Positions 3,549-64,000 of a DNA stretch of 64,000 bases are shown here, piece by piece; the stretch's first letter is position 1; each line of letters starts with the position of its first letter. Position numbers and translations under genes: made by a program. The notes under the pieces were generated by a model. That model was not told where the DNA came from and ran no database searches. It was given only the letters and a program-made list of their open reading frames with translations. Origin of the DNA: Ostrea edulis (Eukaryota); contig NC_079168.1 of the NCBI RefSeq assembly GCF_947568905.1, positions 46,190,001 through 46,254,000 of the forward strand, written 5' to 3'.

Positions 3549-3729
3549 TCCTGTGTTATAATTGGATAAGTTTGGCAATTTGTGTTAATATACATTATTA
3601 TTCTTTATTGCTGAAGACATACGTCTTATGGCATACATGTTTACAAAAATAATAAACAAGTTAATAATCGTATTGTATGGCATGGCATGACATTATATGG
3701 TATGTTACACAATACTGATGTGAATTTAT

Positions 3730-9114: not shown

Positions 9115-9910
9115 TGTATTTGTGAATATTCTACCAATATTCTCCCAGTATGTATTTGTTAATATTCTCCTAGTATATATTTGTAAGTATTCCTCCAGTA
9201 TGTATTTGTGAATATTCCTCCAGTATGTATTTATTAATGTTCTCCCAGTATGTATTTGTTAATATTCTCCCAGTATGCATTTGTTAATATTCTCCCAGTA
9301 TATATTTGTTAATATTCTCCTAGTATGTATTTGTTAATATTCCCCCAGTATGTATTTGTTAATATTCTCCCAGTATGCATTTGTTAATATTCCCCCAGTA
9401 TGTATTTGTTAATATTCCCCCGGTATGTATTTATGAATATTCCCCCAGTATGTATTTGTTAATATTCCCCCAGTATGTATTTGTTAATATTCCCCCGGTA
9501 TGTATTTATGAATATTCCCCCAGTATGTATTTGTTAATATTCTCCCAGTATGCATTTGTTAATATTCTCCCAGTATATATTTGTTAATATTCCCCCGGTA
9601 TGTATTTATGAATATTCCCTCAGTATGTATTTGTTAATATTCTCCTAGTATATATTTGTTAATATTCCCCCAGTATGCATTTGTTAATATTCTCCTAGTA
9701 TATATTTGTTAATATTCCCTCAGTATGTATTTGTTAATATTCTCCCAGTATGCATTTGTTAATATTCTCCTAGTATATATTTGTTAATATTCCCTCAGTA
9801 TGTATTTGTTAATATTCTCCCAGTATGCATTTATTGATATTCTCTTAGTATATATTTGTAAGTATTCCCCCGGTATGTATTTGTGAATATTCCTCCAGTA
9901 TGTATTTGTA
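9115..9910. repeat. 25-bp minisatellite (tatgtatttgttaatattctcccag)n, ~30 copies
   Basis: Direct tandem periodicity; an outlying degenerate unit at ~10345-10395. Confidence 0.96.
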
Positions 9911-11458: not shown

Positions 11459-12960
11459 AACAAGAGATGTTTGTAAAACACATATGCCCCCCATGGTGCA
11501 AAATTGAAAAGGGTTACACACACACACATCATTTAATTGAGAGTAGTATCATCAATTCAAAATATTGAGCAGACAATATATTCCTATGTCAAGAGTGGAT
11601 TGACCATGTGACCTAAAAATCAATAGGGGTCATCAACTTCTGAAGATGTACCAGTGTACCAAGTTTGATGTCTGTCAAGCAAAGGGTTCTCAAGATATTG
11701 AACGGACAGTATATTCCTATGTCCAATTTGACCCTTGGCTTTTGACCATGTGACCTTAAAATAATTAGTAGTCATCTTCTCCTGAAGATGTACCAGTGTA
11801 CCAAGTTTGATGTCTGTCAAGCAAAGGATTCTCAAGATATTGAGCGGACAGTATATTCCTATGTACAGTTTAATCCTTGACCTTTGACCACGCGACCTCA
11901 AAATCAATAGGTGTCATCTTCTCCTGAAGATGTACCAGTGTACCAAGTTTATTGTCTGTCAAGCAAAGGGTTCTGAAGATATGGAGCAGACAGTATATTC
12001 CAATGTCCAGTTTGACCCTTGACCTTTGACCATGTGATCTGAAAATCAATAGGGGTCGTCTTCTCCTCAAGACGTACCAGTGTACCACGTTTGATGTCTG
12101 TCATGCAAAGGGTTCTCAAGATATTGAACTGACAGTATATTCCTATGTCCAGTTTGACCCTTGACCTTTAAACATGTGACCTCAAAATAAATAGGGGTAA
12201 TTTTCTCCTGAAGATGTACCAGTGTACCAAGTTTGATGTCTGTCAAGCGAAGGGTTCTCAAAATATTGAACAGGAAGTATATTCCTGTCTAGTGTGACCC
12301 TTGACCTTTGACCATGTGACCTCAAAATCAACAGTGGTCGTCTTCTCCTGAAGTCGTATCAGTGTACCAAGTTTGATGTCTGTCAAGAAAAGGGTTCTCG
12401 AGATATTTAACGGACAGTATATTCCTATGTCCAGTTTGACCTTTGACCATGTGACCTCAAAATCAATGGGGGTCATCTTCTGAAGATGTACTGGCGTACC
12501 AAGTTTGATGTCTGTCAAGCAAAGGGTTCTCTAGACATTGAATGGTCAGTATATTCCTATGCCCAGTTTGACCCTTGACCTTTAACCAAATGACCTCAAA
12601 ATCAATAAGGGTCATCTACTCCTTAGGATGTACCAGTGTGCCAAGTTTGATGTCTTTTAAGCAAAGGGTTCTCAAGATATTGAGCGGACATTATATTCCT
12701 ATGTCCAGAGTAGATTGACCCTTGACCTTTGACCTTTTGACCTGAAAAACAATAGGGATCCTCTTCTTCTCATAACTAACCCAGATATGAAATATCATTA
12801 TCATCAAGTGAATGGTTCTCAAGATATTGAGCGGACAACACATGGTCTACAGAACGACCGACCGACCGACCGACCGACAGACAGACCAACAGACCGATCG
12901 ACCGACAGGTGCAAAACAATATGCCCCCTCTTTTTCAAAGGGGGGCATAAAAATTGTGAT
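11459..12960. mobile_element. Non-autonomous Helentron/HINE-type element with an internal ~142-bp tandem array
   Basis: Starts aacaagagatg...atatgccccc; unit marker gatgtaccagtgtaccaag at 11645, 11787, 11929 etc. (142-bp period, ~8-9 units); (accg/acag)n microsatellite at 12855-12905; terminal hairpin atatgccccctc..tttcaaagggggg.cataaaaa. Confidence 0.8.
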
Positions 12961-43813: not shown

Positions 43814-45179
43814 ATGAAACGAGAATCACGGTGTTATTAACATATTCTATAAATCAGACTGTGTACATAATTTCTGAATCTATATTATGTAACACATTAA
43901 AATGTCAGTGAAATATGACTAATTTCTAGATGCATGCGATGAAAATTCGACATATTCATAACCTAGTACGTTTAACTCAAGGTTATGAATGCACTTTCGT
44001 GAACATACTAATAGCACATTAGTTCTTAGTTTATACCGTAACGAATTACCAATCTTACATTCTTACCTAGATATGTCATACTTTTAAAAAATTAACAAAA
44101 TATGATTGCAAGAATACGACAGTTGAATATCGACATCGAGAGGAACAATTAATATATGTAAAAATTCCATTGTCTTTAATTGTTCTTCAGTACTTCAATT
44201 CATTATATTATTTTTAATACTGAATGTAGTTCATTAAATTATTCTCCAGTACTTTAGTTCATTCATTTTGTTCACCAACTTGCGTTGCACCTGTTGTAGT
44301 GACGCTTTCTTTGATCATATCATGGATATATTTTTCCATGGACTAATCAGAAGAAGTTATTTTTGACAGAGGTTATACGTACAGTTATAGGACCATTCTC
44401 CTTTAATGAACAAATAGCTGTACTAAGCGCAGTAGATTGATTCAGTATTCCCAACCCACTGGGACAGGGAACATTGCTTATAACAAGCTTTCATATCACT
44501 GAATTCATAATATATCGATCAATTCCGTCTAATATTGTGGATCACCATCAAAGCATGGCAGGTGCATAGGGATATATCATCCAATATGTCTCTGTCTCTC
44601 TACCCGTCTGTTTCCAGTGCTTCGGTTCAGTTCTTTAGGTAACCTCCTGCAGGTAACACGTGTTCTACTTAGAGAATTTTAGTTTTATATTTCAAAGTTG
44701 TCTGTAGAAGAATCAAGCGTAAATTTCCGCCCACAATCTAAAAATATATATTGCATTACTTGAAATAAGTTATGTACGTAGATGCAATAGAATCTATGCA
44801 GCGGGAAAGACTGATTCTTCTTAACTCATGTAGTTTGTCTTTCTTTATCAATAGTTCTTGAAACCATCGATTCATTTCCAATACTCTGTTTCTTCTTTTT
44901 GCTAAGCATTTGTGCACAATAAAGTGTGACGACGACAAATAAGAACTCAAAACACCTCCCCATTAGCCGAAAGTCCCACCCACCTCTGGTATAACCAGGG
45001 GTCCATATTTACCCAACTCTTAATCTTGTATTTGAGATGGATTCTTGTCCATTTCATTCAATGGCAGAAATTATAAAATTTTGTCAGTAATAAATCTAAA
45101 CTGTTTAAAGGTATCTTCTCAATGAAAATACTTATATTCACATACACAACTACCCGTTGTAACCTTACATACATTTAGT

Positions 45180-48100
45180 GCACACACGCACACACATACA
45201 CACGCACGAGCACGCACAAACACACACACACACACACACGTGTGTGTTTGCACACACCTTGTATGTCATACACAAAATGGTGATTTTTTTTTTTGCTCCT
45301 TTTATATTCATTAAATACTTGGAAAGTTTTGTTTTTTGCACGCCTCGAATACACCATTTGTTAACTAAATTTAGATGAATGTGCTGACGTCATAATGCTT
45401 CCCAGTATGAGGACAATCAAGGGGTATAATAGTTGGAAAACAAATTTAATCCATTTAAGAACACCATGAACATACATAATACTTTGCCAAAAAATCCTTT
45501 AAAATCAATTTTCCATCTTCATAATTTTCAGAATGTCTATCTTTTAAATCCCAAAAAGCTGAGAATGCGATCCCTCCATCTTCTCCGCGGTCTCACCACA
45601 CGGGGTTCTTCCGCAGGAGAAAGTCCCGTGGTGTAGAGGAAACTATACCGTAAAGGCCTTGGTTTCATGGGCTTGGTCTTCGATTCTTCGTTTTTGGTGG
45701 AATCCTGGGTATCGGGTGCAAGTTTAAAGCTTTCTATACTGGATAGAAACAGCTTTCGGGGAATAAACTTTGGTATTTTCCCTGTTTCTAATGCCTCAAG
45801 CTCCCCAGGTTTGACCAGTTCACTTTTGACCGGCTGGGTTTTCTGTTTTAATTCTTGTAATTCAACAGGTTTCTGTAGACACTCATTTTTCATTTCCTGA
45901 CTCGCATCTGAAGTGTTCACATGTTTTGTTTCTATCATTACACTGCCGTCATCCTGATCTAGTTTCTGGGCTGTTATATCTTGAAGAACTATTGCACATG
46001 CCTTTTCGACAATGCTCAGGATATATGCTGCAACATCCTCTGTTTTTATACCAAGTTCTTCGCCACTGATTTCAGGAACAGAATGTTTGATTTGTCCGTT
46101 TTCTGCGTTCAGAGAGCTCTCAACAGTTGTCTTGTCTTGTGACTCTTTCTCCAGCACTGCCTCTCCAGTTTGCATGCTTGTCTCAAACACATTTCTCTTC
46201 TTTATTTTCTTTGGTTTGTGTAACTGCATGAAGTATTCGTCGTCAGCCCATGACGGCAGGAATAAAGAAACATTTGCATTTGCAGCTTTTAAAACTTCAA
46301 TTTTCGAGATGGTGTCCTTAACCTGCTCATAGGGTACAAAATCATTTTTCGAATCCTTGTCGTCTGCCATAGAACGGAAAACTTGTCCAGAAATCATCTT
46401 CTTTTGATTTTCCATTCGCTTTACTCTTATCTAATGTATCGCCTCCAAGCAAGCGCACAGTATGTTTACGTTTAGTCGCAAGGGAGAGTGTGTTACGTCG
46501 TACACTTTATGACGTGCTGTACATTGTGACGTAATAATTCGGTGACGTTTAAGAAATCAGATATTCTCTGAAAGAAGAGCATACACTTTCACCCCTTTCT
46601 TGCCCTGATTTTCACTCACAAAGCGCATTCTTAGTGTTATTTGTAATGACAGTAAATGCTTTAATATCAACCATTCTAATGTTTCATTTTATGAAAATAA
46701 ATTCTTGAATTAAATTAAAGACCATTGGAATAAAAAAAAAGCACTAAATACTAAAGCAGCACCCATATCACACGACCTTTCACCTCAGATAAGCTTTTTA
46801 AAAAACTAGGGTGAAGGGTTTGTTCACGAACGCCCCATAGTTATTGATAAATTTTCGTAAGACAAAGTATTCATATGAATATTTAATTTGTTATAGGACT
46901 TGAAAGTTTGTTGTGAAGGGGAAATTGGGCATATAGTTAAGGGTTCTATCTAAAATCGCATTTAATTTACTGTTGGGTGAAAATAACCAAAACAAATGTT
47001 CAATAAAATTATTATCTTTTTCTATGTATTGAGAATACGAAAACCAATACAAAGTCTGCAAATGGTCTCAGTAAAGCATTTAAGATATCTTTAGTTTGTT
47101 ATCTGTGTTCGTATCTATGCCAAATATTCAACAGAACGATTAGAAATTATTCAAAATGTCCATAAAATTTCTGGCTTCTAGACGATTATTTTATGATGAC
47201 TATTAAGACTAATAGTTGTCGTAAAGAAGACGAGAAAATGTTCATTTAATGCGTCAAAGAAATGAATAAGCAATGATATCTTTTCTTGAATTCAACAACA
47301 ACAACAACGAAAAACCCGAGTTTCCGTTCTCAAAACTTGACGTGATTTTTATTTATCGTTTTATAATACATGTATGTAGCTAGTCTAATTGTAAAACAAC
47401 GGTTTTTCAAACTTTCATAGCTAAATCGGTGTAAAACTTGAGCGAAAAGACCGATCGGGCTAGGTACAAATTCTATCGAGAATAAAGATGTACAAGGGGC
47501 GGGTTCAGGAATTGAAATTAGGGGGCGCCACTTCATAAAGCGCGAGAAAATTCCAATGCGAAGACTGGTAAAATATTTAGAGCAATTTTGATCAATTCCG
47601 GAGATGAACGAACTAAGTGAAAAGAATCGTTAATTATATGTTGCAACTATTTATTGGTAGATCAATAAAGCATCTAGTCTGATATAAGATTTGAACTTAA
47701 TTCGCAATGTACCACAGTCAACAGCAAGCTATAAACAGTTTACGCCTGTCCGATCGATCGATACGAAAATGCGTTTGTCCGATCAGACGATCGATTATGT
47801 ATAATTTCTTTTTCCGTGACGTTGCACGTGAAAATTTCTAATCTTGACAGTTTCCGTAAAGTCACATGGTCTTATATTTGAATAAGAAGACCTCTGAATG
47901 GGATACATTTTCACAATGAAGCTCGAGTTATTTCCCCTTGAATACAGGTTGCTGTCCACAATTCATAGCGTCAATATAAGGATTTATTATATTAGTAAAT
48001 CTGATTGTGATTAAGTGCCAGTTAAGGGTTTTTATGTAATTAATGAAAAATAATATTTATGTGTCCATTGTGTGGTTGTTGGTTGTTTTTTTTTCGCAGG

Positions 48101-49750
48101 CAATAATGTTGAGTCAAATGTAATGTTCAAAATCTGTAAGGTGTTAGTCCCCTACTTATTTTGATCAGGATCAAGATATCTTTAGCATATCATCAATTAA
48201 TTATTAACTTTAATCAATATTTTGGACGACCAAAACGCAACTAGATATGCATAAATTACATGTGCAACCAACGCATATACATTACATTGGCAGATCTAGA
48301 CGGGTACGGAGGTTGCAACACACATGTCCCTTTGATTTTGGTTTTAAAAAGAGTGCGAGAGAAAGAGAGAGTGGTATCAGAGTATAGAATTTATATATTT
48401 CCGGGAACATTATTTCTGCATTAATTGTGGAATAAAAATCTATAAATTCAAGCAGTTAGGGGAGGGATAAAACTCCTGTAAGCTTACTAGTATGTTATCC
48501 GACATCAATTTTAACACACCGATTATTATTTTCAACATTCATCAAATTTAGTTTGAAAGGGGGTGTGTGTGAATTAATCACACCTCTTAGCAATATACGT
48601 TGTAAATTCGTTTGTCATTTAAAATTCTTTTTGAAAGAGTATTTTTATTTGGTAGTTAGCCTATAAAACCCAATGCAGACGATAAAAAATACAAAATACA
48701 TCTCACAATTTCAACACTTTAGATCACTTTTTCACTCCCAACATTTTCTATAGATCCGCGCCTGGACAATGTTAATTACAGAATCCGTATCTTATGTAAT
48801 CTTTCTGTTGAAATCTGGGTTGGTTTTTTCTTTTTTCCCGTGCGATTCAATATTTTGAAAATATTTTTATTATTATCATTATTAAGATTAAATTGTAGTG
48901 TATTAAACAGCTCGACCTGCATTGAGTTACGTAGCACTAGGGGGTGGAGGTGGGGACTAACTCCACACTATTTTTGACATCGTTCTTTTCCCGCTATCAT
49001 TACAGGGAAAGTTGGACATTTTTTAATTTCAATCTATAGGCTGGTTCCTTACCTTTTTTTAAAATAGTAGTAGTGTAGTGGAAATATAATCATCAGATTA
49101 TATTCCAAGATAAGAATTTTCATACAACTGTAAAACCAACTTCTTCTCCGGCTCCCCCCTTACAATACACGATGCAATGCAACGCGTCTGATTGTATTTA
49201 TAACATCACATGATCTTTCCGGCTGTCTGGTTTTTTAAAATTAGATTACTTCTAAAATTCTCGGGATTCAATGTAACACAACTTGGACAGAAATAATCAT
49301 TAAATACGGCTGTAACCCCCCCCCCCCCCTTTCCCCAAACCTACCATATGACGAAAATCTTGGCAAAATTTTTACGATACCCAATGTAATGATCGAGTTT
49401 AACATCAGTTCTCGTGAAATCCATGTACGTACAGATCGATGGCGTGGCACAGCCTTCTAATTATAGAATGTCTCACTGTTCGGAATGTATACTGCAAAAG
49501 TCTCGACATTTAAAATTCTTGTTGGAAGTTTTACATATACCATGTTTTATTTTATCGTGGTCATAATAATTCTTGTCCAAAAAATATAAATTAAATAAAT
49601 GAAAAAGAGAAAAGAAAGAAATATTTAAAAGACGTCATTCTTTATCAGTTAGAAAACACACCTCTCCCGCAGAAACGCATGCGTCTTCTCCAATTTTATA
49701 TCAAAGAATGTTCTTGCCGGCCCATAATCGATTTACAATTTGAATATCAC
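45180..49750. repeat. Segmental duplication unit, copy 1 (4571-bp offset to copy 2)
   Basis: Near-identical to 49751-59075 (after removing insertions) and to 59160-63756 (inverted); bounded by (CA)n tracts. Confidence 0.93.
45537..46415 (-). CDS. Uncharacterised 292-aa intronless orphan protein, copy 1
   Basis: 879-nt ORF kept intact in three copies (at most 2 aa differences between any pair); Lys/Glu-rich; C-terminus RPRRRWRDRILSFLGFKR; candidate 5'-UTR acceptor ctcttctttcag ~155 nt upstream. Confidence 0.8.
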   Translation of the reverse strand: MENQKKMISGQVFRSMADDKDSKNDFVPYEQVKDTISKIEVLKAANANVSLFLPSWADDEYFMQLHKPKKIKKRNVFETSMQTGEAVLEKESQDKTTVESSLNAENGQIKHSVPEISGEELGIKTEDVAAYILSIVEKACAIVLQDITAQKLDQDDGSVMIETKHVNTSDASQEMKNECLQKPVELQELKQKTQPVKSELVKPGELEALETGKIPKFIPRKLFLSSIESFKLAPDTQDSTKNEESKTKPMKPRPLRYSFLYTTGLSPAEEPRVVRPRRRWRDRILSFLGFKR

Positions 49751-49795
49751 ACATACACATGGGCACACACACACACACCCGCGCGCACGCGCGCG

Positions 49796-49830
<35 letters not shown>

Positions 49831-50107
49831 TGTTATATGTCATACAAAAAATGGTGATTTTTTCCCCTCCTTTTATATTCATTAAATACTTGGAAAGTTT
49901 TGTTTTGTGCACGCCTCGAATACACCATTTGTTAACTAAATTTAGATGAATGTGCTGACGTCATAATGCTTCCCAGTATGAAGACAATCAAGAGGTATAA
50001 CAGTTGGAAAACAAATTTAATCCATTTAAGAACACCATGAACATACATAATACTTTGCCAAAAAATCCTTTAAAATCCATTTTCCATCTTCATAATTTTC
50101 AGAATGT

Positions 50108-50986
50108 CTATCTTTTAAATCCCAAAAAGCTGAGAATGCGATCCCTCCATCTTCTCCGTGGTCTCACCACACGGGGTTCTTCCGCAGGAGAAAGTCCCGT
50201 GGTGTAGAGGAAACTATACCGTAAAGGCCTTGGTTTCATGGGCTTGATCTTCGATTCTTCGTTTTTGGTGGAATCCTGGGTATCGGGTGCAAGTTTAAAG
50301 CTTTCTATACTGGATAGAAACAGCTTTCGGGGAATAAACTTTGGTATTTTCCCTGTTTCTAAGGCCTCAAGCTCCCCAGGTTTGACCAGTTCACTTTTGA
50401 CCGGCTGGGTTTTCTGTTTTAATTCTTGTAATTCAACAGGTTTCTGTAGACACTCATTTTTCATTTCCTGACTCGCATCTGAAGTGTTCACATGTTTTGT
50501 TTCTATCATTACACTGCCGTCATCCTGATCTAGTTTCTGGGCTGTTATATCTTGAAGAACTATTGCACATGCCTTTTCGACAATGCTCAGGATATATGCT
50601 GCAACATCCTCTGTTTTTATACCAAGTTCTTCGCCACTGATTTCAGGAACAGAATGTTTGATTTGTCCGTTTTCTGCGTTCAGAGAGCTCTCAACAGTTG
50701 TCTTGTCTTGTGACTCTTTCTCCAGCACTGCCTCTCCAGTTTGCATGCTTGTCTCAAACACATTTCTCTTCTTTATTTTCTTTGGTTTGTGTAACTGCAT
50801 GAAGTATTCGTCGTCAGCCCATGACGGCAGGAATAAAGAAACATTTGCATTTGCAGCTTTTAAAACTTCAATTTTCGAGATGGTGTCCTTAACCTGCTCA
50901 TAGGGTACAAAATCATTTTTCGAATCCTTGTCGTCTGCCATAGAACGGAAAACTTGTCCAGAAATCATCTTCTTTTGATTTTCCAT
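50108..50986 (-). CDS. Uncharacterised 292-aa orphan protein, copy 2
   Basis: Differs from copy 1 by T>I (ESKIKPM). Confidence 0.8.
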   Translation of the reverse strand: MENQKKMISGQVFRSMADDKDSKNDFVPYEQVKDTISKIEVLKAANANVSLFLPSWADDEYFMQLHKPKKIKKRNVFETSMQTGEAVLEKESQDKTTVESSLNAENGQIKHSVPEISGEELGIKTEDVAAYILSIVEKACAIVLQDITAQKLDQDDGSVMIETKHVNTSDASQEMKNECLQKPVELQELKQKTQPVKSELVKPGELEALETGKIPKFIPRKLFLSSIESFKLAPDTQDSTKNEESKIKPMKPRPLRYSFLYTTGLSPAEEPRVVRPRRRWRDRILSFLGFKR

Positions 50987-51658
50987 TCGCTTTACTCTTA
51001 TCTAATGTATCGCCTCCAAGCAAGCGCACAGTATGTTTATGTTTAGTCGCAAGGGAGAGTGCGTTACGTCGTACACTTTATGACGTGCTGTACATTGTGA
51101 CGTAATAATTCGGTGACGTTTAAGAAATCAGATATTCTCTGAAAGAAGAGCATACACTTTCACCCCTTTCTTGCCCTGATTTTCACTCACAAAGCACATT
51201 CTTCGTGTTATTTGTAATGACAGTAAATGCTTTAATATCAACCATTCTAATTTTTCATTTTATGAAAATAAATTCTTGAATTAAATTAAAGACCATTGGA
51301 ATAAAAAAGAAGAAGCACTAAATACTAAAGCAGCACCCATATCACACGACCTTTCACCTCAGATAAGCTTTTTTTAAACTAGGGTGAAGGGTTTGTTCAC
51401 GAACACCCCATAGGTATTGATAAATTTTCGTAAGACATAAAGCATTCATATGAATATTTGATTTGTTATAGGACTTGAAAGTTTGTTGTGAAGGGGAAAT
51501 TGGGCATATAGTTAAGGGTTCTATCTAAAATCGCATTTAATTTACTGTTGGGTGAAAATAACCAAAACAAATGTTCAATAAAATTATTATCTTTTTCTAT
51601 GTATTGAGAATACGAAAACCAATACAAAGTCTGCAAATGGTCTCAGTAAAGCATTTAA

Positions 51659-54600
51659 GAGCTTGTCTACGAGAAAACCATGCAAATATATAAAAATGAA
51701 GGAAATGGTGGTCATCAATATCATTTTTAATCATTTATATCATTGGAGTATATGGTTGGAATAATTATAATTTGAGGTCAATTTATTGATAGGTCGTTTC
51801 TATTTTTAGTAACAGCGCATTCTGTATTTACACGTGGATTAGTCTTTGAACACAAGAAAAATCCTTAAATATTAGGGTTTTATTTTTTCAAAAATGCAAA
51901 TCAATTCTGAAGGCTTATGAAAAGAATGGATTTTTTATGATATTTCCATGTAAACCACTTATGGAGAAATCATGTTTGACATCATAAGTGTCCATATAGA
52001 GATTACATGGAGCCTATAATTTGGCATTGTGCCAAACTTTTTTCATTTTGTGTTATATGGTCAATTTTGAAATAGGTGTTGCTGCAAAAGTAACGCTTAG
52101 ATTTCTTTAAAAGTGTATAATACTTTGATATCAAATCCTTGTCTGTAAAATATAAAAAAATTGTACTTTGGACTTTTGGCCGTTCATTTGCAATTAAAAT
52201 TTAAAAACTGACAAAAATGATTATTTTTAAGCATTTAAAATTATCTTTTAAAAGATTAAAGATTTAAAATTTGTGATATTAGATGCATAATATGTTTGGA
52301 AATTTAATTTTATTTATAGATTTAACATTTTCTAATAAATAAATCCCAGTAATCTACTATTTTATATGAAAAAGGGGGTCTTTTAATGAAATAGACCTGT
52401 TGCTGGAATTACCTCCCCTTTGATGCACTCTTCATACGTAGAAGGTACAAAATGATAGCAATATTATGGAATGTTATGATTCCAACTTGAAATGGGATTT
52501 GAGAATTTGTACATCATGTTTATGTGATATCAGTGAAAGACATAACAGTATCTGTGAATGTAATCCAGAAATTTCTAAATATTGGCAGGGTTTAAAAAGT
52601 ATCCGGTACTTCGTCCTGTTATACTGCAAACTAGTACCAGTGGTCAGGCATTTTGTCATTGAAGAATTGAAAGCGTTCTTTCCTTGATAATTCATGCATT
52701 TACCGAGAATGCTTAGATGTTATATGGAGGAAATCAAAGAAAATATGCATCTATAGTCAGTCCAGATGTGAGGATCTAGTGCAGCCCCCCCCCCCCTCCC
52801 CGAATTAGCAAAATGTATTTACCATCATGATTGATGACAAAAATTTGTTATTAGTTTACATATATGCACTAAGTAATGAGGACGGGACAAAATAAGAAAA
52901 GGGTGAAATAAAAATGCATAAAGTGAACTCAAAGAATGTATACTGTAACAGTTTGCTCGGTATCTTTCTTCTTCAGTGCTCAATGTAACAATATGACATA
53001 CTTGATGCTTAATCATAGGTTACGATTCAACATGCGAAAATTTACACCTTTCTCTATTTTACCAACAACAAATATATAGATATTGTAAACTGATGGTATT
53101 ACGTATATGTATACATGTATGCTAATGTAGTTTCTTAAAGTCATTGATGTAGGTAGAGCTTGGATCATCACTATACTTTGTTCATCATGAGAAATTGATC
53201 GGGAAAAAATTTGGAAAAATCATTTATCTGACAGGGAAACCGAAGATTATTTAGATCAGGTCTCTTTAGCTAAATCAGCCTCCCCCTCTACTTTTTTATG
53301 GCAATCAATAAACAATATAAATGGAAGCTTGAACTGATGAATTAAATCCTTGTCCCCCCCCCCCATTATTATCATTATTAAGGATTTTGAGCTTCGGGTT
53401 GTGTTAAAAGTAATTTTAGGGAGGTTGGGGGGTTCTACAAAAAATTTGCCACCCGACCACACCCTCCGCCCTGGTGATGAGTGCCAACTACGGGGCCTCT
53501 CCACCTAGCTACACTGTATGTGTTTAGACAGGACAGACTATACCAGTCGGGTCAGGTATAAACAGTACATTTCATTACAAATTATATTTCCAATTATTAC
53601 AAGCGAACTTCTTTACTTTTGTGCGAATTCGGACGTTTTTATTATCTGACTTTCATCTTCGGTGCAATTTATGTGATTACTGTCAGTTGGTATTTAAGCT
53701 ATATTTCATTTGTACGTGTAATGGTGTTGGGAGTGGAGTGCGAATGCAAAGAATATTTCTGTATTTAGATATATTCAACATTATTGATTATTTTATGATT
53801 TTAACAAGATCATTCACTATCTAAGAGCATTTTACCATTACCACCCCTCTTCTCTCAATATACTGTTTATAATCATTAATTTCCGATATTGAATATTGCT
53901 GCTTCGAACCCTTTCGCATGGATTTAGAATGTAGAATAATACGCTACATGTAAGAATAAAAAACAAAAGAAAGACAAGAAAAGAACATGCACATTCCTTT
54001 TAGCTCACCAGGACGACTATCCGGAGAGCTACATGTATTGTAATGACCCCAGTGTTGGCGTCGGCCCCACTTTAAGGAAACATTTTAACCTGGGTTATAT
54101 CTTCTAAACCAAGGGGGTAGGGTTTTGATATATCCCTTATTGATTCCCCATGAAGAGACCTTTGATGTGGTACCAAGACTTTCGACCTTGTGACCTTGAC
54201 CTATTTTTTTTTTTAAACTTCAACCTGGGCTATGTCTTTTGAACCAATAGGGATAAGGCTTTGATATTTTACATATATAGATGCGTCATGAAGAGACCTT
54301 TGTTTTGGTTTGACCTAACGACCTTTGCCTTGAACTTTGACGTACTGTTCAAAAACTTTTATCTTTATCTTTTGAACCAAGAGTGATAGATCTTTGATGT
54401 TTCAAACATATATTCCATTTCTTTTGTTACCAGAACTGTCAACGTCGACCTTGGACATTGACCTATTTTTCAAAAACTTTTAACCTTTTGAACAAACGGT
54501 TAGGTACAGTCATCTGACAACTCTTGTTTATATGTACATATTAAGCATGTTATTTAATTGTTTAAGAGTTGCTGCTCAATTTTTTTCTGGGTACTTCATT

Positions 54601-55962
54601 TGTTAAAGTTTGATGACATCTAAAAATTCCTAACCACAAAGTACTTTTTATCTAATATATTGTACCTGACAACTTCATATGACGTGTTAACTGTCCCGAG
54701 GAAAAGATAAAGATTTGGGGTATTATACTGTGGATATTTATTAAGTTCTGTCTTCACACAAGTTTTACCTTTGAACTTAAAGCACGTCAGTCTTTAAATT
54801 GGTCTAAATGTTACTATGGCAACAATTTTATTTGTTTTAGAATATCAATATTGTGACTCTCATACAACTTTTCAAAAGTTACATTGCTGTCTGGCTTAGT
54901 TTTGCGATTGAGTTTGATTATTTCAGAATGTTTTCAATAACCAGTCAGATTTTTAAAAAATAGATTTATCCTTATTGTATCCATGGGAAAAGCAAATCTA
55001 TGAAGAAATATGATCCAATTGCTTGTGGTATATTTAAGTCTCTGTAGGACCACAATGTAAACTAGTCATTTGTACTAATCGTGCTATCCTGTCTAAATAA
55101 AGAATTTATTATATATAGCATAATATAAATTGGCATGAAATTTGTTTTTAAAAATTGCATTTTAAAGGTACACAAATATCAATTTTGTTAAATTACAACT
55201 ATTCATACGATGCATATTATTTTTTAAAAACGTTATTTTTTCAAATTTTGCAATTTGTCACCATGGCAACCAGGACCCATAGCAACAAAAAATGATTGAT
55301 ACATACTTCTGGTCATCTTATGTGAAATCATAAAATTATATAAGACTTAATAAGATAACAAGGACCATGCATGGCAAACAGGTTTAGGTGGCTACCAGAA
55401 TAAAAGCTCTACAAGCAGGAAAAAATGCGAAGTATTAATATATTTACTATAATAGAGAGTCCAAAGACAGATTTTTGGTATATCGTAAATATAATTCTTC
55501 TCTATAAGATGAAAGTAATTTTTAATAAATCAAAGCGTTACTTTTTGACTACTGGTTGATTCAAAAGTTATCATTTTCTGCAATTTATCAAAATCTGGAA
55601 TCGTGCCAAATTTGTGACCTTTGTGCACTTAAACGGAAGTAAAATTTTAGATTCCCACTAAACAATATGAATATGCATATCCAGTTGTTTTATAAACTGT
55701 GTCAATTTTTAAAAATCCATTTTCAATAACCTGTTAGAATTTTTAAATAGAAAGGGTAAAATATACATAATTTTACCCTTTTGTCAGAACAAAAGTGCTA
55801 TTTTTAGTAACATGGCTGCAAATCCCTATCCAATGACTACACCCCCGAAAAAAATATGCCAAAGTATTTGATATTGATGTACTTTATTACACTCAAAATA
55901 TGTTGTTGATCCGACAACCTTGCTTCCATCACATTTTGCATGGTTTTCTCGTAGACAAGCTC
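51659..55962. mobile_element. Non-autonomous PIF/Harbinger-like DNA transposon, 4304 bp
   Basis: 28-bp perfect TIR gagcttgtctacgagaaaaccatgcaaa; TAA on both sides; empty site (single TAA) in copies 1 and 3; no transposase ORF seen. Confidence 0.8.
53998..54529. mobile_element. HINE/Helentron-type element nested in the Harbinger-like element
   Basis: ttttagctcacc start, tgaccttgacc-type core repeats, ends caactcttgttt. Confidence 0.65.
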
Positions 55963-56860
55963 TAAAGAGATGTTTTTGTTTGTTGTCTGTGTTCGTATCT
56001 ATGCCAAATATTCAACAGAACGATTAGAAATTATTCAAAGTGTCCATAAAATTCTGGCTTCTAGACGATTATTTTATGATGACTATTAAGACTAATAGTT
56101 GTCGTAAAGAAGACGAGAAAATGTTCATTTCATGCGTCAAAGAAATGAATAAGCAATGATATCTTTTCTTGAATTCAACAACAACAACAACGAAAAACCC
56201 GAGTTTCCGTTCTCAAAACTTGACGTGATTTTTATTTATCGTTTTATAATACATGTATGTAGCTAGTCTAATTGTAAAACAACGGTTTTTCAAACTTTCA
56301 TAGCTAAATCGGTGTAAAACTTGAGCGAAAAGACCGATCGGGCTAGGTACAAATTCTATCGAGAATAAAGATGTACAAGGGGCGGGTTCAGGAATTGAAA
56401 TTAGGGGGCGCCACTTCATAAAGCGCGAGAAAATTCCAATGCGAAGACTGGTAAAATATTTAGAGCAATTTTGATCAATTCCGGAGATGAACGAACTAAG
56501 TGAAAAGAATCGTTAATTATATGTTGCAACTATTTATTGGTAGATCAATAAAGCATCTAGTCTGATATAAGATTTGAACTTAATTCGCAATGTACCACAG
56601 TCAACAGCAAGCTATAAACAGTTTACGCCTGTCCGATCGATCGATACGAAAATGCGTTTGTCCGATCAGACGATCGATTATGTATAATTTCTTTTTCCGT
56701 GACGTTGCACGCGAAAATTTCTGATCTTGGCAGTTTCCGTAAAGTCACATGGTCTTATATTTGAATAAGAAGACCTCTGAATGGGATACATTTTCACAAT
56801 GAAGCTCGAGTTATTTCCCCTTGAATACAGATTGCTGTCCACAATTCATAGCGTCAATAT

Positions 56861-57230
56861 TTATAGGTTATAGACTTTGTATGGGAAAATATGACGACCG
56901 AGTTTTTTGGCGCGTAGACGGACCGAGCTTGCGAGGTCCGTTCGCGACAAAAAACGAGGTCGTCATATTTCCCATACAAAGTCTATAACTTTTTTATTAT
57001 ATACTTTCAATTTCATTTAGAAACTAACAATAATTTTATTTTTAACAATAACTTTATCGGTTTAACTGAGTAAAAGATGAAAAACACGAAAAATTTGAAA
57101 ATTAACGGCGTAGAAATTTGATTGTGACGTAATGTTTGCGGGCCGGAATGTTTCCGGGCATATATCGTGTGATATATGCCCGCAAACTTTTAAAGAAAAA
57201 AGAAGAGATGAAATTGAAAGTATATAATAA
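56861..57230. mobile_element. 370-bp foldback insertion with no evident target-site duplication (Crypton-like?)
   Basis: Absent from copies 1 and 3 (gcgtcaatat|aaggattt); two internal inverted-repeat pairs, 56867-56899/56958-56989 and 56992-57016/57208-57232. Confidence 0.75.
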
Positions 57231-59077
57231 AAGGATTTATTATATTAGTAAATCTGATTGTGATTAAGTGCCAGTTAAGGGTTTTTATGTAATTAATGAA
57301 AAATAATGTGACTGCAAAATAAGTTTAGTCATTGATTTTATTTATGTGTCCATTGTGTGGTTGTTGTTTTTTTTTTTCGCAGGCAATAATGTTGAGTCAA
57401 ATGTAATGTTCAAAATCTGTAAGGTGTTAGTCCCCTACTTATTTTGATCAGGATCAAGATATCTTTAGCATATCATCAATTAATTATTAACTTTAATCAA
57501 TATTTTGGACGACCAAAACGCAATTAGATATGCATAAATTACATGTGCAACCAACGCATATACATTACATTGGCAGATCTAGACGGGTACGGAGGTTGCA
57601 ACACACATGTCCCTTTGATTTTGGTTTTAAAAAGAGAGAAAGAGAGAGTGGTATCAGAGTATAGAATTTATATATTTCCGGGAACATTATTTCTGCATTA
57701 ATTGTGGAATAAAAATCTATAAATTCAAGCAGTTAGGGGAGGGATAAAACTCCTGTAAGCTTACTAGTATGTTATCCGACATCGATTTTAACACACCGAT
57801 TATTATTTTCAACATTCATCAAATTTAGTTTGAAAGGGGGTGTGTGAGAATTAATCACACCTCTTAGCAATATACGTTGTAAATTCGTTTGTCATTTAAA
57901 ATTCTTTTTGAAAGAGTATTTTTATTTGGTAGTTAGCCTATAAAACCCAATGCAGACGATAAAAAATACAAAATACATCTCACAATTTCAACACTTTAGA
58001 TCACTTTTTCACTCCCAACATTTTCTATAGATCCGCGCCTGGACAATGTTAATTACATTTACATGTATATGGAATCCGTATCTTATGTAATCTTTCTGTT
58101 GAAATCTGGGTGGGTTCTTTCTTTTTCCACGTGCGATTCAATATTTGGAAAATATTTTTATTATTATCATTATTAAAATCAAATTGTAATGTATTAAACA
58201 GCTCGACCTGCATTGAGTTACGTAGCACTAGGGGGTGGAGGTGGGGACTAACTCCACACTATTTTTGACATCGTTCTTTTCCCGCTATCATTACAGGGAA
58301 AGTTGGACATTTTTTAATTTCAATCTATAGGCTGGTTCCTTAACTTTTTTTTAAAATAGTAGTAGTGTAGTGGAAATATAATCATCAGATTATATTCCAA
58401 GATAAGAATTTTCATACAACTGTAAAACCAACTTCTTCTCCGGCTCCCCCCTTACAATACACGATGCAATGCAACGCGCCTAATTATATTTATAACATCA
58501 CATGATCTTTCCGGCTGTCTGGTTTTTTAAAATTAGATTACTTCTAAAATTCTCGGGATTCAATGTAACACAACTTGGACGGCTGTAACCCCCCCCCCCC
58601 CCCCTTTCCCCAAACCTACCATATGACGAAAATCTTGGCAACATTTTTACGATACTCAATGTAATGATCGAGTTTAACATCAGTTCTCGTGAAATCCATG
58701 TACGTACAGATCGATGGCGTGGCACACCCCGCATTTTCTGTCTTCTAATTATAGAATGTCTCACTGTGCGGAGTGTATACTGCAAAAGTCTCGATATTTA
58801 AAATTCTTGTCGGAAGTTTACATATACCGTGTTTTATTTTATCGTCTTGTCCAAAAAAAAAAAAAAAAAAAAAAAAAAATAAAAAAGAAAGAAATATTTA
58901 AAAGACGTCATTCTTTATCAGTTAGAAAACACACCTCTCCCGCAGAAACGCATGCGTCTTCTCCAATTTTATATCAAAGAATGTTTTGCCGGCCTATAAT
59001 CGATTTACAATTTGAATATCACCCACACACATGGGCACACACACACCCGCACACACACACACACACACACACACGCA

Positions 59078-59159
59078 CAACTGGCTGTTGTAGCCTGCTG
59101 CTTAGGACGCTCGCTTTGGAACCAGGAAGTCCGGCGCCGTATTCAATTTTCGCCACAGG
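59078..59159 (+). mobile_element. tRNA-derived SINE head (5' half of a split SINE)
   Basis: tgtagcctgctgcttaggacgctcgctttggaaccaggaagtc resembles the head at 31325-31375 (gtagttcagtggttagagtgctcgctttgtgacggggaggtc). Confidence 0.55.
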
Positions 59160-60994
59160 CAACAAACAAAAACATCTCTTAAATGCTTTACTGAGACCAT
59201 TTGCAGACTTTATATTGGTTTTCGTATTCTCAATACATAGAAAAAGATAATAATTTTATTGAACATTTGTTTTGGTTATTTTCACCCAACAGTAAATTAA
59301 ATGCGATTTTAGATAGAACCCTTAACTATATGCCCAATTTCCCTTCACAACAAACTTTCAAGTCCTATAATAAATTAAATATTCATATGAATACTTTATG
59401 TCTTACGAACCCCTCACCCTAGTTTTTTAAAAAGCTTATCTGAGGTGAAAGCTCGTGTGATATGGGTGCTGCTTTAGTATTTATTGTTTCTTCTTTTTTT
59501 ATTCCAATAGTCTTTAATTTAATTCAAGAATTTATTTTCATAAATTGAAAAATTAGAATGGTTGATATTAAAGCATTTACTGTCATTACAAATAACACGA
59601 AGAATGTGCTTTGTGATTGAAAATCAGGGCAAAAAAGGGGTGAAAGTGTATGCTCTTCTTTCAGAGAATATCTGATTTCTTAAACGTCACCGAATTATTA
59701 CGTCACAATGTACAGCACGTCATAAAGTGTACGACGTAACACACTCTCCCTTGCGACTAAACATAAACATACTGTGCGCTTGCTTGGAGGCGATACATTA
59801 GATAAGAGTAAAGCGAATGGAAAATCAAAAGAAGATGATTTCTGGACAAGTTTTCCGTTCTATGGCAGACGACAAGGATTCGAAAAATGATTTTGTACCC
59901 TATGAGCAGGTTAAGGACACCATCTCGAAAATTGAAGTTTTAAAAGCTGCAAATGCAAATGTTTCTTTATTCCTGCCGTCATGGGCTGACGACGAATACT
60001 TCATGCAGTTACACAAACCAAAGAAAATAAAGAAGAGAAATGTGTTTGAGACAAGCATGCAAACTGGAGAGGCAGTGCTGGAGAAAGAGTCACAAGACAA
60101 GACAACTGTTGAGAGCTCTCTGAACGCAGAAAACGGACAAATCAAACATTCTGTTCCTGAAATCAGTGGCGAAGAACTTGGTATAAAAACAGAGGATGTT
60201 GCAGCATATATCCTGAGCATTGTCGAAAAGGCATGTGCAATAGTTCTTCAAGATATAACAGCCCAGAAACTAGATCAGGATGACGGCAGTGTAATGATAG
60301 AAACAAAACATGTGAACACTTCAGATGCGAGTCAGGAAATGAAAAATGAGTGTCTACAGAAACCTGTTGAATTACAAGAATTAAAACAGAAAACCCAGCC
60401 GGTCAAAAGTGAACTGGTCAAACCTGGGGAGCTTGCGGCCTTAGAAACAGGGAAAATACCAAAGTTTATTCCCCGAAAGCTGTTTCTATCCAGTATAGAA
60501 AGCTTTAAACTTGCACCCGATACCCAGGATTCCACCAAAAACGAAGAATCGAAGACCAAGCCCATGAAACCAAGGCCTTTACGGTATAGTTTCCTCTACA
60601 CCACGGGACTTTCCCCTGCGGAAGAACCCCGTGTGGTGAGACCGCGGAGAAGATGGAGGGATCGCATTCTCAGCTTTTTGGGATTTAAAAGATAGGCATT
60701 CTGAAAATTATGAAGATGGAAAATTGATTTTAAAGGATTTTTTGGCAAAGTATTATGTATGTTCATGGTGTTCTTAAATGGATTAAATTTGTTTTCCAAC
60801 TGTTATACCTCTTGATTGTCCTCATACTGCGAAGCATTATGACGTCAGCACATTCATCTAAATTTAGTTAACAAATGGTGTAATCGAGGCGTGCACAAAA
60901 CAAAACTTTCCAAGTATTTAATGAATATAAAAGGAGGGGGAAAAATCACCATTTTTTGTATGACATATAACAAGGTGTGTGTGTGTGTATGCGC

Positions 60995-61025
<31 letters not shown>

Positions 61026-63756
61026 TGTGTGCCCATGTGTATGTGTGATATTCAAATTGTAAATCGATTATGGGCCGGCAAGAACATTCTTTGATATAAA
61101 ATTGGAGAAGACGCATGCGTTTCTGCGGGAGAGGTGTGTTTTCTAACTGATAAAGAATGACGTCTTTTAAATATTTCTTTCTTTTTTCTTTTTCATTTAT
61201 TTTATTATTTTTTTTTGGACAAGAATTATTATGACCACGATAAAATAAAACATGGTATATGTAAAACTTCCAACAAGAATTTTAAATGTCGAGACTTTTG
61301 CGGTATACATTCCGAACAGTGAGACATTCTATAATTAGAAGGCTGTGCCACGCCATCGATCTGTACGTACATGGATTTCACGAGAACTGATGTTAAACTC
61401 GATCATTACATTGAGTATCGTAAAAATGTTGCCAAGATTTTCGTCATATGGTAGGTTTGGGGGGGGGGGGAGGGGGTTACATCCGTATTTAATGATTATT
61501 TCTGTCCAAGCTGTGTTACATTGAATCCCGAGAATTTTAGAAGTAATCTAATTTTAAAAAACCAGACAGCCGGAAAGATCATGTGATGTTATAAATACAA
61601 TCAGACGCGTTGCATTGCATCGTGTATTATAAGGGGGGAGCCGGAGAAGAAGTTGGTTTTACAGTTGTATGAAAATTCTTATCTTGGAATATAATCTGAT
61701 GATTATATTTCCACTACACTACTACTATTTTTTTAAAAAAAGGTAAGGAAGCAGCCTATAGATTGAAATTAAAAAATGTCCAACTTTCCCTGTAATGATA
61801 GCGGGAAAAGAACGATGTCAAAAATAGTGTGGAGTTAGTCCCCACCTCCACCCCCTAGTGCTACGTAACTCAATGCAGGTCGAGCTGTTTAATACATTGC
61901 AATTTGATTTTAATAATGATAATAATAAAAATATTTTCCAAATATTGAATCGCACGGGAAAAAAGAAAAAACCCACCCAGATTTCAACAGAAAGATTACA
62001 TAAGATACGGATTCCATATGCATGTAAATGTAATTAACATTGTCCAGGCGCGGATCTCTAGAAAATGTTGGGAGTGAAAAAGTGATCTAAAGTGTTGAAA
62101 TTGTGAGATGTATTTTGTATTTTTTATCGTCTGCATTGGGTTTTATAGGCTAACTACCAAATAAAAATACTCTTTCAAAAAGAATTTTAAATGACAAACG
62201 AATTTACAACGTATATTGCTAAGAGGTGTGATTAATTCACACACACCCCCTTTCAAACTAAATTTGATGAATGTTGAAAATAATAATCGGTGTGTTAAAA
62301 TCGATGTCGGATAACATACTAGTAAGCTTACAGGAGTTTTATCCCTCCCCTAACTGCTTGAATTTATAGATTTTTATTCCACAATTAATGCAGAAATAAT
62401 GTTCCCGGAAATATATAAATTCTATACTCTGATACCACTCTCTCTTTCTCTCTTTTTAAAACCAAAATCAAAGGGACATGTGTGTTGCAACCTCCGTACC
62501 CGTCTAGATCTGCCAATGTAATGTATATGCGTTGGTTGCACATGTAATTTATGCATATCTAATTGCGTTTTGGTCGTCCAAAATATTGATTAAAGTTAAT
62601 AATTAATTGATGATATGCTAAAGATATCTTGATCCTGATCAAAATAAGTAGGGGACTAACACCTTACAGATTTTGAACATTACATTTGACTCAACATTAT
62701 TGCCTGCGAAAAAAAAAAACAACAACCACACAATGGACACATAAATAAAATCAATGACTAAACTTATTTTGCAGTCACATTATTTTTCATTAATTACATA
62801 AAAACCCTTAACTGGCACTTAATCACAATCAGATTTACTAATATAATAAATCCTTATATTGACGCTATGAATTGTGGACAGCAACCTGTATTCAAGGGGA
62901 AATAACTCGAGCTTCATTGTGAAAATGTATCCCATTTAGAGGTCTTCTTATTCAAATATAAGACCATGTGACTTTACGGAAACTGCCAAGATCAGAAATT
63001 TTCGCGTGCAACGTCACGGAAAAAGAAATTATACATAATCGATCGTCTGATCGGACAAACGCATTTTCGTATCGATCGATCGGACAGGCGTAAACTGTTT
63101 ATAGCTTGCTGTTGACTGTGGTACATTGCGAATTAAGTTCAAATCTTATATCAGACTAGATGCTTTATTGATCTACCAATAAATAGTTGCAACATATAAT
63201 TAACGATTCTTTTCACTTAGTTTGTTCATCTCCGGAATTGATCAAAATTGCTCTAAATATTTTACCAGTCTTCGCATTGGAATTTTCTCGCGCTTTATGA
63301 AGTGGCGCCCCCTAATTTCAATTCCTGAACCCGCCCCTTGTACATCTTTATTCTCGATAGAATTTGTACCTAGCCCGATCGGTCTTTTCGCTCAAGTTTT
63401 ACACCGATTTAGCTATGAAAGTTTGAAAAACCGTTGTTTTACAATTAGACTAGCTACATACATGTATTATAAAACGATAAATAAAAATCACGTCAAGTTT
63501 TGAGAACGGAAACTCGGGTTTTGTGTTGTTGTTGTTGTTGTTGAATTCAAGAATAGATATCATTGCTTATTCATTTCTTTGACGCATGAAATGAACATTT
63601 TCTCGTCTTCTTTACGACAACTATTAGTCTTAATAGTCATCATAAAATAATCGTCTAGAAGCCAGAAATTTTATGGACACTTTGAATAATTTCTAATGGT
63701 TCTGTTGAATATTTGGCATGAAGAGATCCTTTAACGTTTTCATAGATACGAACACA
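59160..63756. repeat. Segmental duplication unit, copy 3: inverted and circularly permuted
   Basis: Reverse complement starts at the position equivalent to 55988 and ends at the position equivalent to 55985, passing once through the (CA)n/(GC)n junction. Confidence 0.9.
59817..60695 (+). CDS. Uncharacterised 292-aa orphan protein, copy 3 (inverted)
   Basis: Differs from copy 1 by E>A (GELAALETG). Confidence 0.8.
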   Translation: MENQKKMISGQVFRSMADDKDSKNDFVPYEQVKDTISKIEVLKAANANVSLFLPSWADDEYFMQLHKPKKIKKRNVFETSMQTGEAVLEKESQDKTTVESSLNAENGQIKHSVPEISGEELGIKTEDVAAYILSIVEKACAIVLQDITAQKLDQDDGSVMIETKHVNTSDASQEMKNECLQKPVELQELKQKTQPVKSELVKPGELAALETGKIPKFIPRKLFLSSIESFKLAPDTQDSTKNEESKTKPMKPRPLRYSFLYTTGLSPAEEPRVVRPRRRWRDRILSFLGFKR

Positions 63757-63950
63757 TCGATTCTGGCGTAGCGTTAAACATAGGTAGTGGTTGCTCCTTC
63801 GCCAGGCACCCGGCTTTAGAAGGGAACGTCACAGGTGTTTTGTTATTACCTTGACACATGCAGATGTAGGCGTAGACACGACACAGAACCTTCTCTGATT
63901 CAGTCTCGTCATGCACAGGTCAAATTATGGCTCTTCACCTACAGCTGCTG
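63757..63950 (+). mobile_element. tRNA-derived SINE body and tail (3' half of the split SINE)
   Basis: cgttaaacataggtagtggttgctccttcgccaggca matches the body at 31425-31455; gcacaggtcaaa...cacctacagctg matches 31165-31206. Confidence 0.65.
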
Positions 63951-64000
63951 TCGATTTCTATTCTTTTAATTAAGGAAAGGAGCTTGATTTAAACCTATAA

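What the first reader, a model, noticed from the sequence alone, without database searches (positions are those of the whole stretch)
59078..63950. Inverted copy is one circularly permuted unit inserted into a SINE: signature of a re-integrated DNA circle
Read on the minus strand, copy 3 starts at the position equivalent to 55988, passes the (CA)n junction and the gene, and ends at the position equivalent to 55985: once round the unit with only 2 nt missing. A ~22-24-nt filler lies near one end (63720-63741). Its left flank is a tRNA-SINE head and its right flank continues that SINE's body, so the unit appears to have split a pre-existing SINE. The simplest model is excision of a unit-length extrachromosomal circle (recombination within the tandem array or between the CA tracts), opening at a new point, and integration next to the donor locus. 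That would be gene amplification through eccDNA.
Basis: partly seen in the sequence, partly recalled or inferred. Interest (0 to 1): 0.72.

Follow-up and report, generated by a model that had tools for sequence, protein, structure and literature searches.

The report
One-period inverted repeat copy splitting a SINE
Next to a two-copy tandem repeat in the flat oyster genome lies a third, inverted copy exactly one repeat period long that starts and ends at the same internal point and splits an old SINE, as expected if a unit-length (probably circular) piece of DNA was released and re-inserted; the repeat itself belongs to a mobile family found on many chromosomes.

Summary
Window 59160-63756 (minus strand) is one full period of the neighbouring 4.6-kb repeat. 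It begins and ends at one internal point S, carries the repeat's (CA)n end-to-end junction inside, and lies between the head and body of one tRNA-type SINE, with no target duplication.

Three corrections:
- The 24-nt "filler" is ancestral sequence that copies 1 and 2 have lost.
- The "unit" is not a private local gene. At least 140 matches to its 292-aa ORF lie on many chromosomes, and each sampled dispersed copy is bounded by (CA)n.
- S is a local hot spot and copy 3 lies only about 110 nt from the array, so a freely roaming circle is not required.

Copies 1-3 form a 100%-supported clade (about 1.1% apart, against 2.4-2.7% to other loci), so copy 3 arose locally.

Best reading (0.6): a unit-length DNA molecule from the local array was captured by end joining at a break in the SINE. 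It was either a monomeric circle opened at S or the equivalent S-to-S linear fragment.

Rivals are replicative template switching, element-type mobilisation and misassembly.

An unchecked first-reader note (s1-307082) describes what is probably the same family on another piece of this genome.

The parts
45180..45250 (+). Left (CA)n tract bounding the array
   Evidence: Sequence read. Dispersed copies all start right after such a tract.
45250..49765 (+). Copy 1 of the 4.6-kb unit (part A 45250-47099, part B 47100-49765). It has a cluster of 5 changes at 47085-47101 and a 24-nt deletion just past S.
   Evidence: Self-BLAST; comparison with dispersed copies.
45537..46415 (-). 292-aa ORF of copy 1
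   Evidence: Intact in all 12 copies examined; dN/dS about 0.5 on the more diverged comparisons.
49745..49825 (+). Copy 1 / copy 2 junction: CA-rich motif, (CG)n, (CA)n
   Evidence: Among the junctions examined, only the internal junction of copy 3 shares the (CG)n-CATACAC motif.
49825..51660 (+). Copy 2, part A (ORF 50108-50986, minus strand)
51661..55967 (+). X: a young, non-coding 4.3-kb element with terminal inverted repeats, inserted about 25 nt from S in copy 2
   Evidence: Terminal inverted repeats read. No ORF above 82 aa. At least 134 first-look candidates; the 40 scored are 97-100% identical.
55968..59040 (+). Copy 2, part B, with a private insertion of about 366 nt at 56861-57225
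59020..59077 (+). Right (CA)n tract ending the array
59078..59159 (+). tRNA-like head of a SINE (left flank of the insert)
   Evidence: Aligns with the heads of family copies. ARAGORN does not call it a tRNA.
59160..63756 (-). Copy 3: one period of the unit, circularly permuted (B, then the (CA)n junction, then A), both ends at point S
59817..60695 (+). 292-aa ORF of copy 3, intact; 1-2 amino-acid differences from copies 1 and 2
60973..61042 (-). Internal end-to-end junction of the unit inside copy 3
63720..63743 (-).
   Evidence: Present in all dispersed copies shown.
63757..63955 (+). Body of the same SINE (right flank of the insert)

Best explanation
Copy 3 is a DNA-level, local re-insertion of exactly one period of the neighbouring repeat. 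A unit-length molecule was released from, or copied off, the local (CA)n-bounded units. It carried the unit's end-to-end (CA)n junction, and both of its ends lay at one internal point S, which sits in the loop of a small quasi-palindrome. It was joined in inverted orientation into a double-strand break in a SINE about 110 nt beyond the array, by end joining with 0-5 nt of microhomology and no target duplication.

The molecule was most likely a monomeric circle, formed by recombination between (CA)n tracts or between units and opened by a single break at S. I put the circle at about 0.35 of the total. The equivalent linear S-to-S fragment, from breaks at S in two adjacent units, is about 0.25.

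Shown: the anatomy, the local descent, the SINE split, and the absence of a target duplication. Inferred: circular versus linear form, and the timing.
For: - The insert is collinear with the end of copy 1, the junction and the start of copy 2.
- In the canonical copies examined its two ends are adjacent, 2-3 nt apart in most.
- The SINE head and body are collinear with family copies, 23 nt against 24 nt downstream of the junction, so there is no target duplication or loss.
- Copies 1-3 form a clade with 100% bootstrap: 1.07-1.24% pairwise, against 2.4-2.7% to copies on other chromosomes.
- The ORFs are 99.5-99.7% identical locally and at most 98.5% elsewhere.
- The junction inside copy 3 shares a (CG)n-CATACAC motif only with the local copy 1/2 junction.
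- Copy 3 has private substitutions and indels and keeps 24 ancestral nt that copies 1 and 2 lack. It is a distinct old copy, not a duplicated assembly of them.
- An exact one-period length is what a circle or an S-to-S fragment predicts. A template-switch product could have returned at any of 18 CACA sites in the insert.
- S shows independent signs of fragility: a templated mutation cluster in copy 1, the 24-nt deletion, and two transposon insertions within 30 nt.
Against: - No read-level or population evidence could be obtained.
- No circle was observed.
- A free circle would not be expected to land 110 nt from its donor, which points to a coupled local repair event.
- Copies 1 and 2 share a 24-nt deletion that copy 3 lacks. 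This needs later gene conversion or a parallel deletion.
- The hairpin at S is weak (z = -0.48).
- The left junction shares CACAG with the unit. That also fits microhomology-primed copying.
Confidence: 0.6

Rival explanations
1. Replicative or repair template switching (FoSTeS/MMBIR, or fold-back priming after resection). A broken 3' end in the SINE annealed through CACAG microhomology to point S of the array on the complementary strand, copied one period, and switched back.
For: - There is 5-nt microhomology at the left junction, and the insert ends in CACA.
- The insert is inverted and only about 110 nt from its template.
- S shows a quasi-palindrome templated mutation in copy 1, so template switching has happened at this spot.
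Against: - The copy would have to stop exactly one period later. The insert holds 18 CACA sites, so that is roughly a 1-in-18 chance or worse.
- No templated filler is present at either junction once the 24 nt are recognised as ancestral.
Confidence: 0.2
2. Copy 3 is a product of the family's own mobility. This would be reverse transcription, or rolling-circle copying, of a multimeric or circular template by a partner element supplied in trans (Penelope-like, LINE or Helentron-type), primed off-target in the SINE.
For: - The family is dispersed, always bounded by (CA)n, and often tandem.
- Some arrays begin with a 5'-truncated unit (L029, L032, L034).
- Penelope-like elements show microsatellite bias and tandem/inverted insertions (PMC8557442).
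Against: - The unit carries no reverse transcriptase, endonuclease or recombinase domain, and no ribozyme.
- The inverted copy is full-length, not 5'-truncated. It is not abutting the array, and it is on the wrong side for the Penelope pattern if the unit is read A to B.
- The priming polarity (CACA on UGUG) is opposite to what the canonical (CA)n ends would need.
- The exact unit length needs a circular or precisely cleaved template.
- Copy 3 descends from the local copies, not from a distant master.
Confidence: 0.1
3. Assembly artefact: a haplotig or chimeric read placed in inverted orientation.
For: - The roughly 1.1% divergence between copies is in the range of oyster heterozygosity (my own knowledge).
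- Junctions could not be checked with reads.
Against: - The insert is exactly one period and sits between two collinear halves of one SINE.
- It keeps ancestral sequence absent from both other copies.
- It has its own indels.
- No further family sequence follows in the next 9 kb (L036).
Confidence: 0.05
4. The break at S was made by the transposase of element X, which sits about 25 nt away in copy 2.
For: X lies within about 25 nt of S. A second inverted-repeat element sits at the same T-rich spot in a copy on C2.
Against: X is up to 100% identical to other genomic copies, whereas copy 3 is about 1.1% diverged. X is therefore much younger. Copy 3 also passes through the X site in its empty state.
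Confidence: 0.02

Closest known systems
Translocation through circular intermediates: cattle KIT 'colour sidedness' (Durkin et al. 2012, from my own knowledge) and human segmental duplications with reversed segment order (PMC7450558, abstract seen)
   Same: The duplicated segment is a circular permutation of the donor and carries the donor's end-to-end junction inside. It was inserted by illegitimate joining.
   Different: - The scale is 4.6 kb, not hundreds of kb.
- The donor is a (CA)n-bounded repeat.
- The insert lies about 110 nt from the donor, in inverted orientation.
- No circle has been shown.
eccDNA from tandem repeats, such as yeast CUP1 circles (PMC6890164, abstract seen)
   Same: Unit-length circles are expected from recombination between tandem units or their flanking repeats.
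   Different: Those are somatic or ageing-related circles that were observed physically. Here only a germline footprint is seen.
Penelope-like element insertions (PMC8557442)
   Same: Microsatellite-biased integration, tandem copies, and inverted copies nearby.
   Different: - There is no RT/GIY-YIG ORF and no hammerhead.
- The inverted copy is complete, permuted and separated from the array.
- The ORF is an uncharacterised 292-aa protein.
Quasi-palindrome templated mutation and hairpin-associated breakage (general knowledge, from memory)
   Same: S lies in the loop of an imperfect inverted repeat. Copy 1 carries clustered changes that improve arm complementarity.
   Different: The arms are short and the predicted hairpin is not significantly stable.

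Membership tests
Circle-mediated (eccDNA) re-insertion | The insert is a circular permutation of the donor unit and contains the donor's end-to-end junction | tested here: met
Circle-mediated (eccDNA) re-insertion | Insert length equals one unit, with both ends at the same point | tested here: met
   The two ends are adjacent, 2-3 nt apart in most canonical copies. The parse is ambiguous between -2 and +4 nt.
Circle-mediated (eccDNA) re-insertion | Physical existence of the circle (Circle-seq, outward PCR, junction reads) | not testable with these tools
Circle-mediated (eccDNA) re-insertion | Exclusion of a linear unit-length fragment or a templated copy | tested here: inconclusive
   S is a hot spot and the insert adjoins its donor.
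tRNA-derived SINE (flanks of the insert) | tRNA-like head followed by the family body, collinear with other genomic copies | tested here: met
   Alignment with 10 family copies; at least 141 first-look candidates for the family. ARAGORN does not call the degraded head a tRNA.
Penelope-like element | ORF with reverse transcriptase and GIY-YIG endonuclease | tested here: not met
   No Pfam domain in the 292-aa ORF or in 8 relatives. No other ORF above 93 aa in part B.
Penelope-like element | Hammerhead ribozyme in the repeat | tested here: not met
   Rfam E-value scan of 44500-64000 found no ribozyme.
Penelope-like element | Microsatellite-biased, tandem insertions | tested here: met
Helitron / Helentron | 5' TC and 3' CTRR or palindrome termini at the copy boundaries; insertion at AT or TT | tested here: not met
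   Canonical boundaries lie in (CA)n. S is internal in all other copies.
PIF/Harbinger-type transposon (element X only) | Terminal inverted repeats with a 3-bp TWA target duplication and a DDE transposase | tested here: inconclusive
   Terminal inverted repeats of about 25 nt and flanking TAA are readable. No transposase ORF.

The most novel reading that the evidence does not exclude
The whole family (at least 140 ORF matches, many intact) is a mobile gene cassette that spreads as a double-stranded DNA circle. The circle would recombine through its (CA)n tract with genomic (CA)n microsatellites, a Campbell-type integration that leaves (CA)n on both sides and builds tandem arrays. Copy 3 would then be an off-target integration of that circle, preserving the otherwise invisible circle junction.
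Probability: 0.15. Interest if true: 0.8.

Novelty: new member of a known kind. Interest (0 to 1): 0.5.

Why it matters
Germline footprints of unit-length DNA molecules that were re-inserted are rare and mostly known at large scale in mammals. Here the footprint is clean at near-nucleotide resolution: one period, an internal end-to-end junction, and a split SINE without target duplication. It concerns a repeat carrying a selected, oyster-specific ORF that has spread to many chromosomes, always next to (CA)n. If circles are involved, the locus offers a testable entry point into how microsatellite-bounded gene cassettes multiply in bivalve genomes. If they are not, it is a well-defined example of repair-mediated inverted duplication at a quasi-palindromic hot spot.

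Tried and rejected
- Filler as a sign of end-joining: rejected. The 24 nt are ancestral.
- S as a true element terminus or recurrent unit boundary: rejected. The A-end and B-start hits are adjacent in the scored copies where both were found.
- A self-cleaving ribozyme at S that would give unit-length RNA: none in Rfam.
- A stable hairpin at S: not significant.
- Transposase X as the cause: X is far younger.
- A second permuted copy at C1:61.41 Mb (L032): rejected. The apparent end continues into a nested element that is also present in L033.
- Function of the ORF:
  - no Pfam domain;
  - Atlas search blank;
  - word-search homologues named only from oysters, all 'uncharacterized';
  - 28 relatives in 1.84 billion representatives;
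  - AlphaFold model of low confidence, pLDDT 44, so no fold search was made.
Full report
**Anatomy**

Self-comparison of the window and direct reading give the following order on the + strand:
- a (CA)n tract at 45180-45250;
- copy 1 of a 4.6-kb unit, which I split into part A (45250-47099, with a 292-aa ORF on the minus strand) and part B (47100-49765);
- a CA/CG-rich junction;
- copy 2, part A (49825-51660);
- a 4.3-kb element X with terminal inverted repeats of about 25 nt (51661-55967);
- copy 2, part B (55968-59040, with a private 366-nt insertion);
- a (CA)n tract;
- 82 nt of SINE head (59078-59159);
- an inverted copy 3 (59160-63756);
- the SINE body (63757 to about 63955).

No family sequence follows in the next 9 kb (L036).

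**Check of the observation**

Read on the minus strand, copy 3 runs from the start of B to the end of B, through the (CA)n junction, then from the start of A to the end of A. It aligns in one piece with 47117-51396.

In canonical copies elsewhere in the genome, the sequences matching the two ends of copy 3 are directly adjacent. The A-end hit and the B-start hit are separated by 2-3 nt on C4, C1, C9 and others, and the sequence reads straight through GTTTGTTG-TC-TGTGTTCG.

The SINE claim also holds. The right flank belongs to a family with at least 141 first-look candidates. Ten copies aligned with the joined flanks show a tRNA-like head followed by the body, collinear with our two halves. Downstream of the junction our copy has 23 nt where the family has 24. 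I see no target-site duplication and no loss, although the SINE is old (about 70-80% identical to its relatives) and the parse is uncertain by a few nucleotides.

The left junction reads CGCCACAGG|CAACAAAC, while the unit reads GAACACAGACAACAAAC. The insert ends in GAACACA. A 4-5-nt CACA(G) is therefore shared, and 'two nt missing' could equally be 'nothing missing, one substitution, 4-nt microhomology'.

**Correction 1: the filler**

The 24 nt at about 63720-63743 are present in every dispersed copy examined (L024-L034). Copies 1 and 2 share a deletion of exactly these 24 nt between two ATG repeats. Copy 3 retains the ancestral state, so there is no filler at that junction.

**Correction 2: the unit is a dispersed, mobile family**

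The ORF has 143 matches in this genome. Many are intact, and copies on C1, C2, C4 and C9 are 95-98% identical. Part B is likewise dispersed.

In the 12 loci fetched, unrelated flanks meet a (CA)n tract, then the same first bases of A. At the other end, the same CA-rich motif at the end of B is followed by (CA)n and then unrelated flank. Tandem pairs or triplets of whole units recur on C2 and C1, and some arrays start with a truncated unit (L029, L032, L034).

The unit carries no other ORF above 93 aa, no Pfam domain and no ribozyme. The ORF is intact in all 12 copies examined, with dN/dS about 0.5 on the more diverged comparisons. It has relatives in oysters, including a 33%-identical Crassostrea virginica protein, all named 'uncharacterized'. 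It is predicted to be largely disordered.

The family is thus an unclassified, non-autonomous, (CA)n-associated mobile unit carrying a real gene. I could not decide how it moves.

**Origin of copy 3**

Over 3,642 ungapped columns, copies 1, 2 and 3 differ by 1.07-1.24% from each other and by 2.4-2.7% from copies on other chromosomes. They form a clade with 100% bootstrap and no clear order inside it. Site patterns are mosaic, which suggests gene conversion.

The junction inside copy 3 and the copy 1/2 junction share a (CG)n-CATACAC motif that the other junctions I examined, and the outer (CA)n tracts, lack. Copy 3 therefore descends from the local units, and the tandem duplication and the inverted insertion are of similar age.

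Element X is up to 100% identical to other genomic copies, and the 40 scored are all at least 97%, so it arrived much later. Its nearness to S is not causal.

**Point S is a hot spot**

S lies in the loop of about 30 nt between two imperfectly complementary arms. Copy 1 carries five clustered changes beside S. Three of them make the left arm more complementary to the right arm, which is the pattern of quasi-palindrome templated mutation (my own knowledge). Copies 1 and 2 have lost the right arm (the 24-nt deletion). Two different inverted-repeat elements have inserted within 30 nt of S in different copies. The predicted DNA hairpin is nevertheless weak.

**Mechanism**

The exact one-period length with both ends at S is the strong fact. 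There are three routes to it:
- A monomeric circle opened once at S predicts it directly.
- A linear fragment released by breaks at S in two adjacent units predicts it too.
- A template-switch copy has to return exactly one period later. With 18 CACA sites in the insert, that is roughly a 1-in-18 coincidence or worse.

Against a freely diffusing circle stands the position of the insert, about 110 nt from the array. This argues for a coupled local repair event. The absence of a target duplication, the inverted orientation and the 0-5-nt microhomology fit end joining at a break in the SINE.

I therefore put 0.6 on 'unit-length DNA molecule from the local array captured by end joining' (circle about 0.35, linear S-to-S fragment about 0.25). 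The rest is 0.2 on replicative template switching, 0.1 on element-type mobilisation from a multimeric or circular template, and 0.05 on misassembly.

One loose end remains. The 24-nt deletion shared by copies 1 and 2 but not by copy 3 needs later conversion between the tandem copies, or a parallel deletion.

**Comparison with known cases**

Circular permutation as a footprint of circle-mediated translocation is known from cattle KIT (my own knowledge) and has been proposed for human segmental duplications (PMC7450558). Unit circles from tandem genes are known in yeast (PMC6890164). Penelope-like elements share the microsatellite bias and the tandem/inverted arrangements (PMC8557442), but their defining ORF and ribozyme are absent here and the geometry differs. 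I file the finding as a new, small-scale member of the circle/fragment re-insertion kind. Its most novel open reading is that the whole family travels as a (CA)n-recombining circle.

**Limits**

- An unchecked first-reader note (s1-307082) describes a '5-kb tandem gene duplication with (TG)n at all three junctions' on another piece of this genome. It is probably the same family.

Noticed in passing
window 51661-55967: X is a young, high-copy, non-coding 4.3-kb element with inverted repeats of about 25 nt (GAGCTTGTCTACGAG...) and flanking TAA, which looks PIF/Harbinger-like. At least 134 first-look candidates; the 40 scored are 97-100% identical, so the family was recently active.
   Followed up: partly
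window 47080-47101 (copy 1): A cluster of five changes beside point S. Three of them improve complementarity to an inverted-repeat arm 30 nt away. This looks like a quasi-palindrome templated mutation.
   Followed up: partly
window 47119 and 56003 (copies 1 and 2): A shared 24-nt deletion between ATG direct repeats. It is absent from copy 3 and from all dispersed copies, which implies conversion between the tandem copies or a parallel deletion.
   Followed up: partly
L027:5435-6802 (G000 C2, about 33.30 Mb): A different element of about 1.4 kb with inverted repeats, inserted in the same T-rich stretch next to S in another family copy.
   Followed up: no
window 56861-57225: An insertion of about 366 nt private to copy 2, part B. 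Not identified.
   Followed up: no
G000 C1:107364400-107364748 (+) and C1:107371043-107371391 (-): Two older family fragments with identical scores in opposite orientation, 6.3 kb apart. This may be another inverted pair. It could not be fetched.
   Followed up: no
G000 C2:33298570-33313449 (L027/L028); C1:78.83-78.85 Mb (L029/L030): Other arrays of whole units bounded by (CA)n. Tandem partners are each other's closest relatives (1.5-1.9% apart), so the arrays grow locally.
   Followed up: partly
window 59817-60695 and relatives P0001-P0006: The 292-aa protein family has invariant motifs (NDFVP...DTI..IE, PxWAD, FIPRKLFLS) and a basic C-terminus. Named hits are from oysters only. No known domain, and the protein is predicted to be mostly disordered.
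   Followed up: partly
window 2752-3560, 9136-9915, 11557-12837: Three satellite-like tandem arrays seen in the self-comparison: about 33-nt and 25-nt periods, and a longer unit of about 140 nt.
   Followed up: no
L032:5810-5900 and L035 3' flank: A small palindromic MITE-like element (...TTCGCTAGCCAAGGGGTTACGATCC...) replaces the (CA)n junction in one tandem remnant and recurs next to another copy.
   Followed up: no
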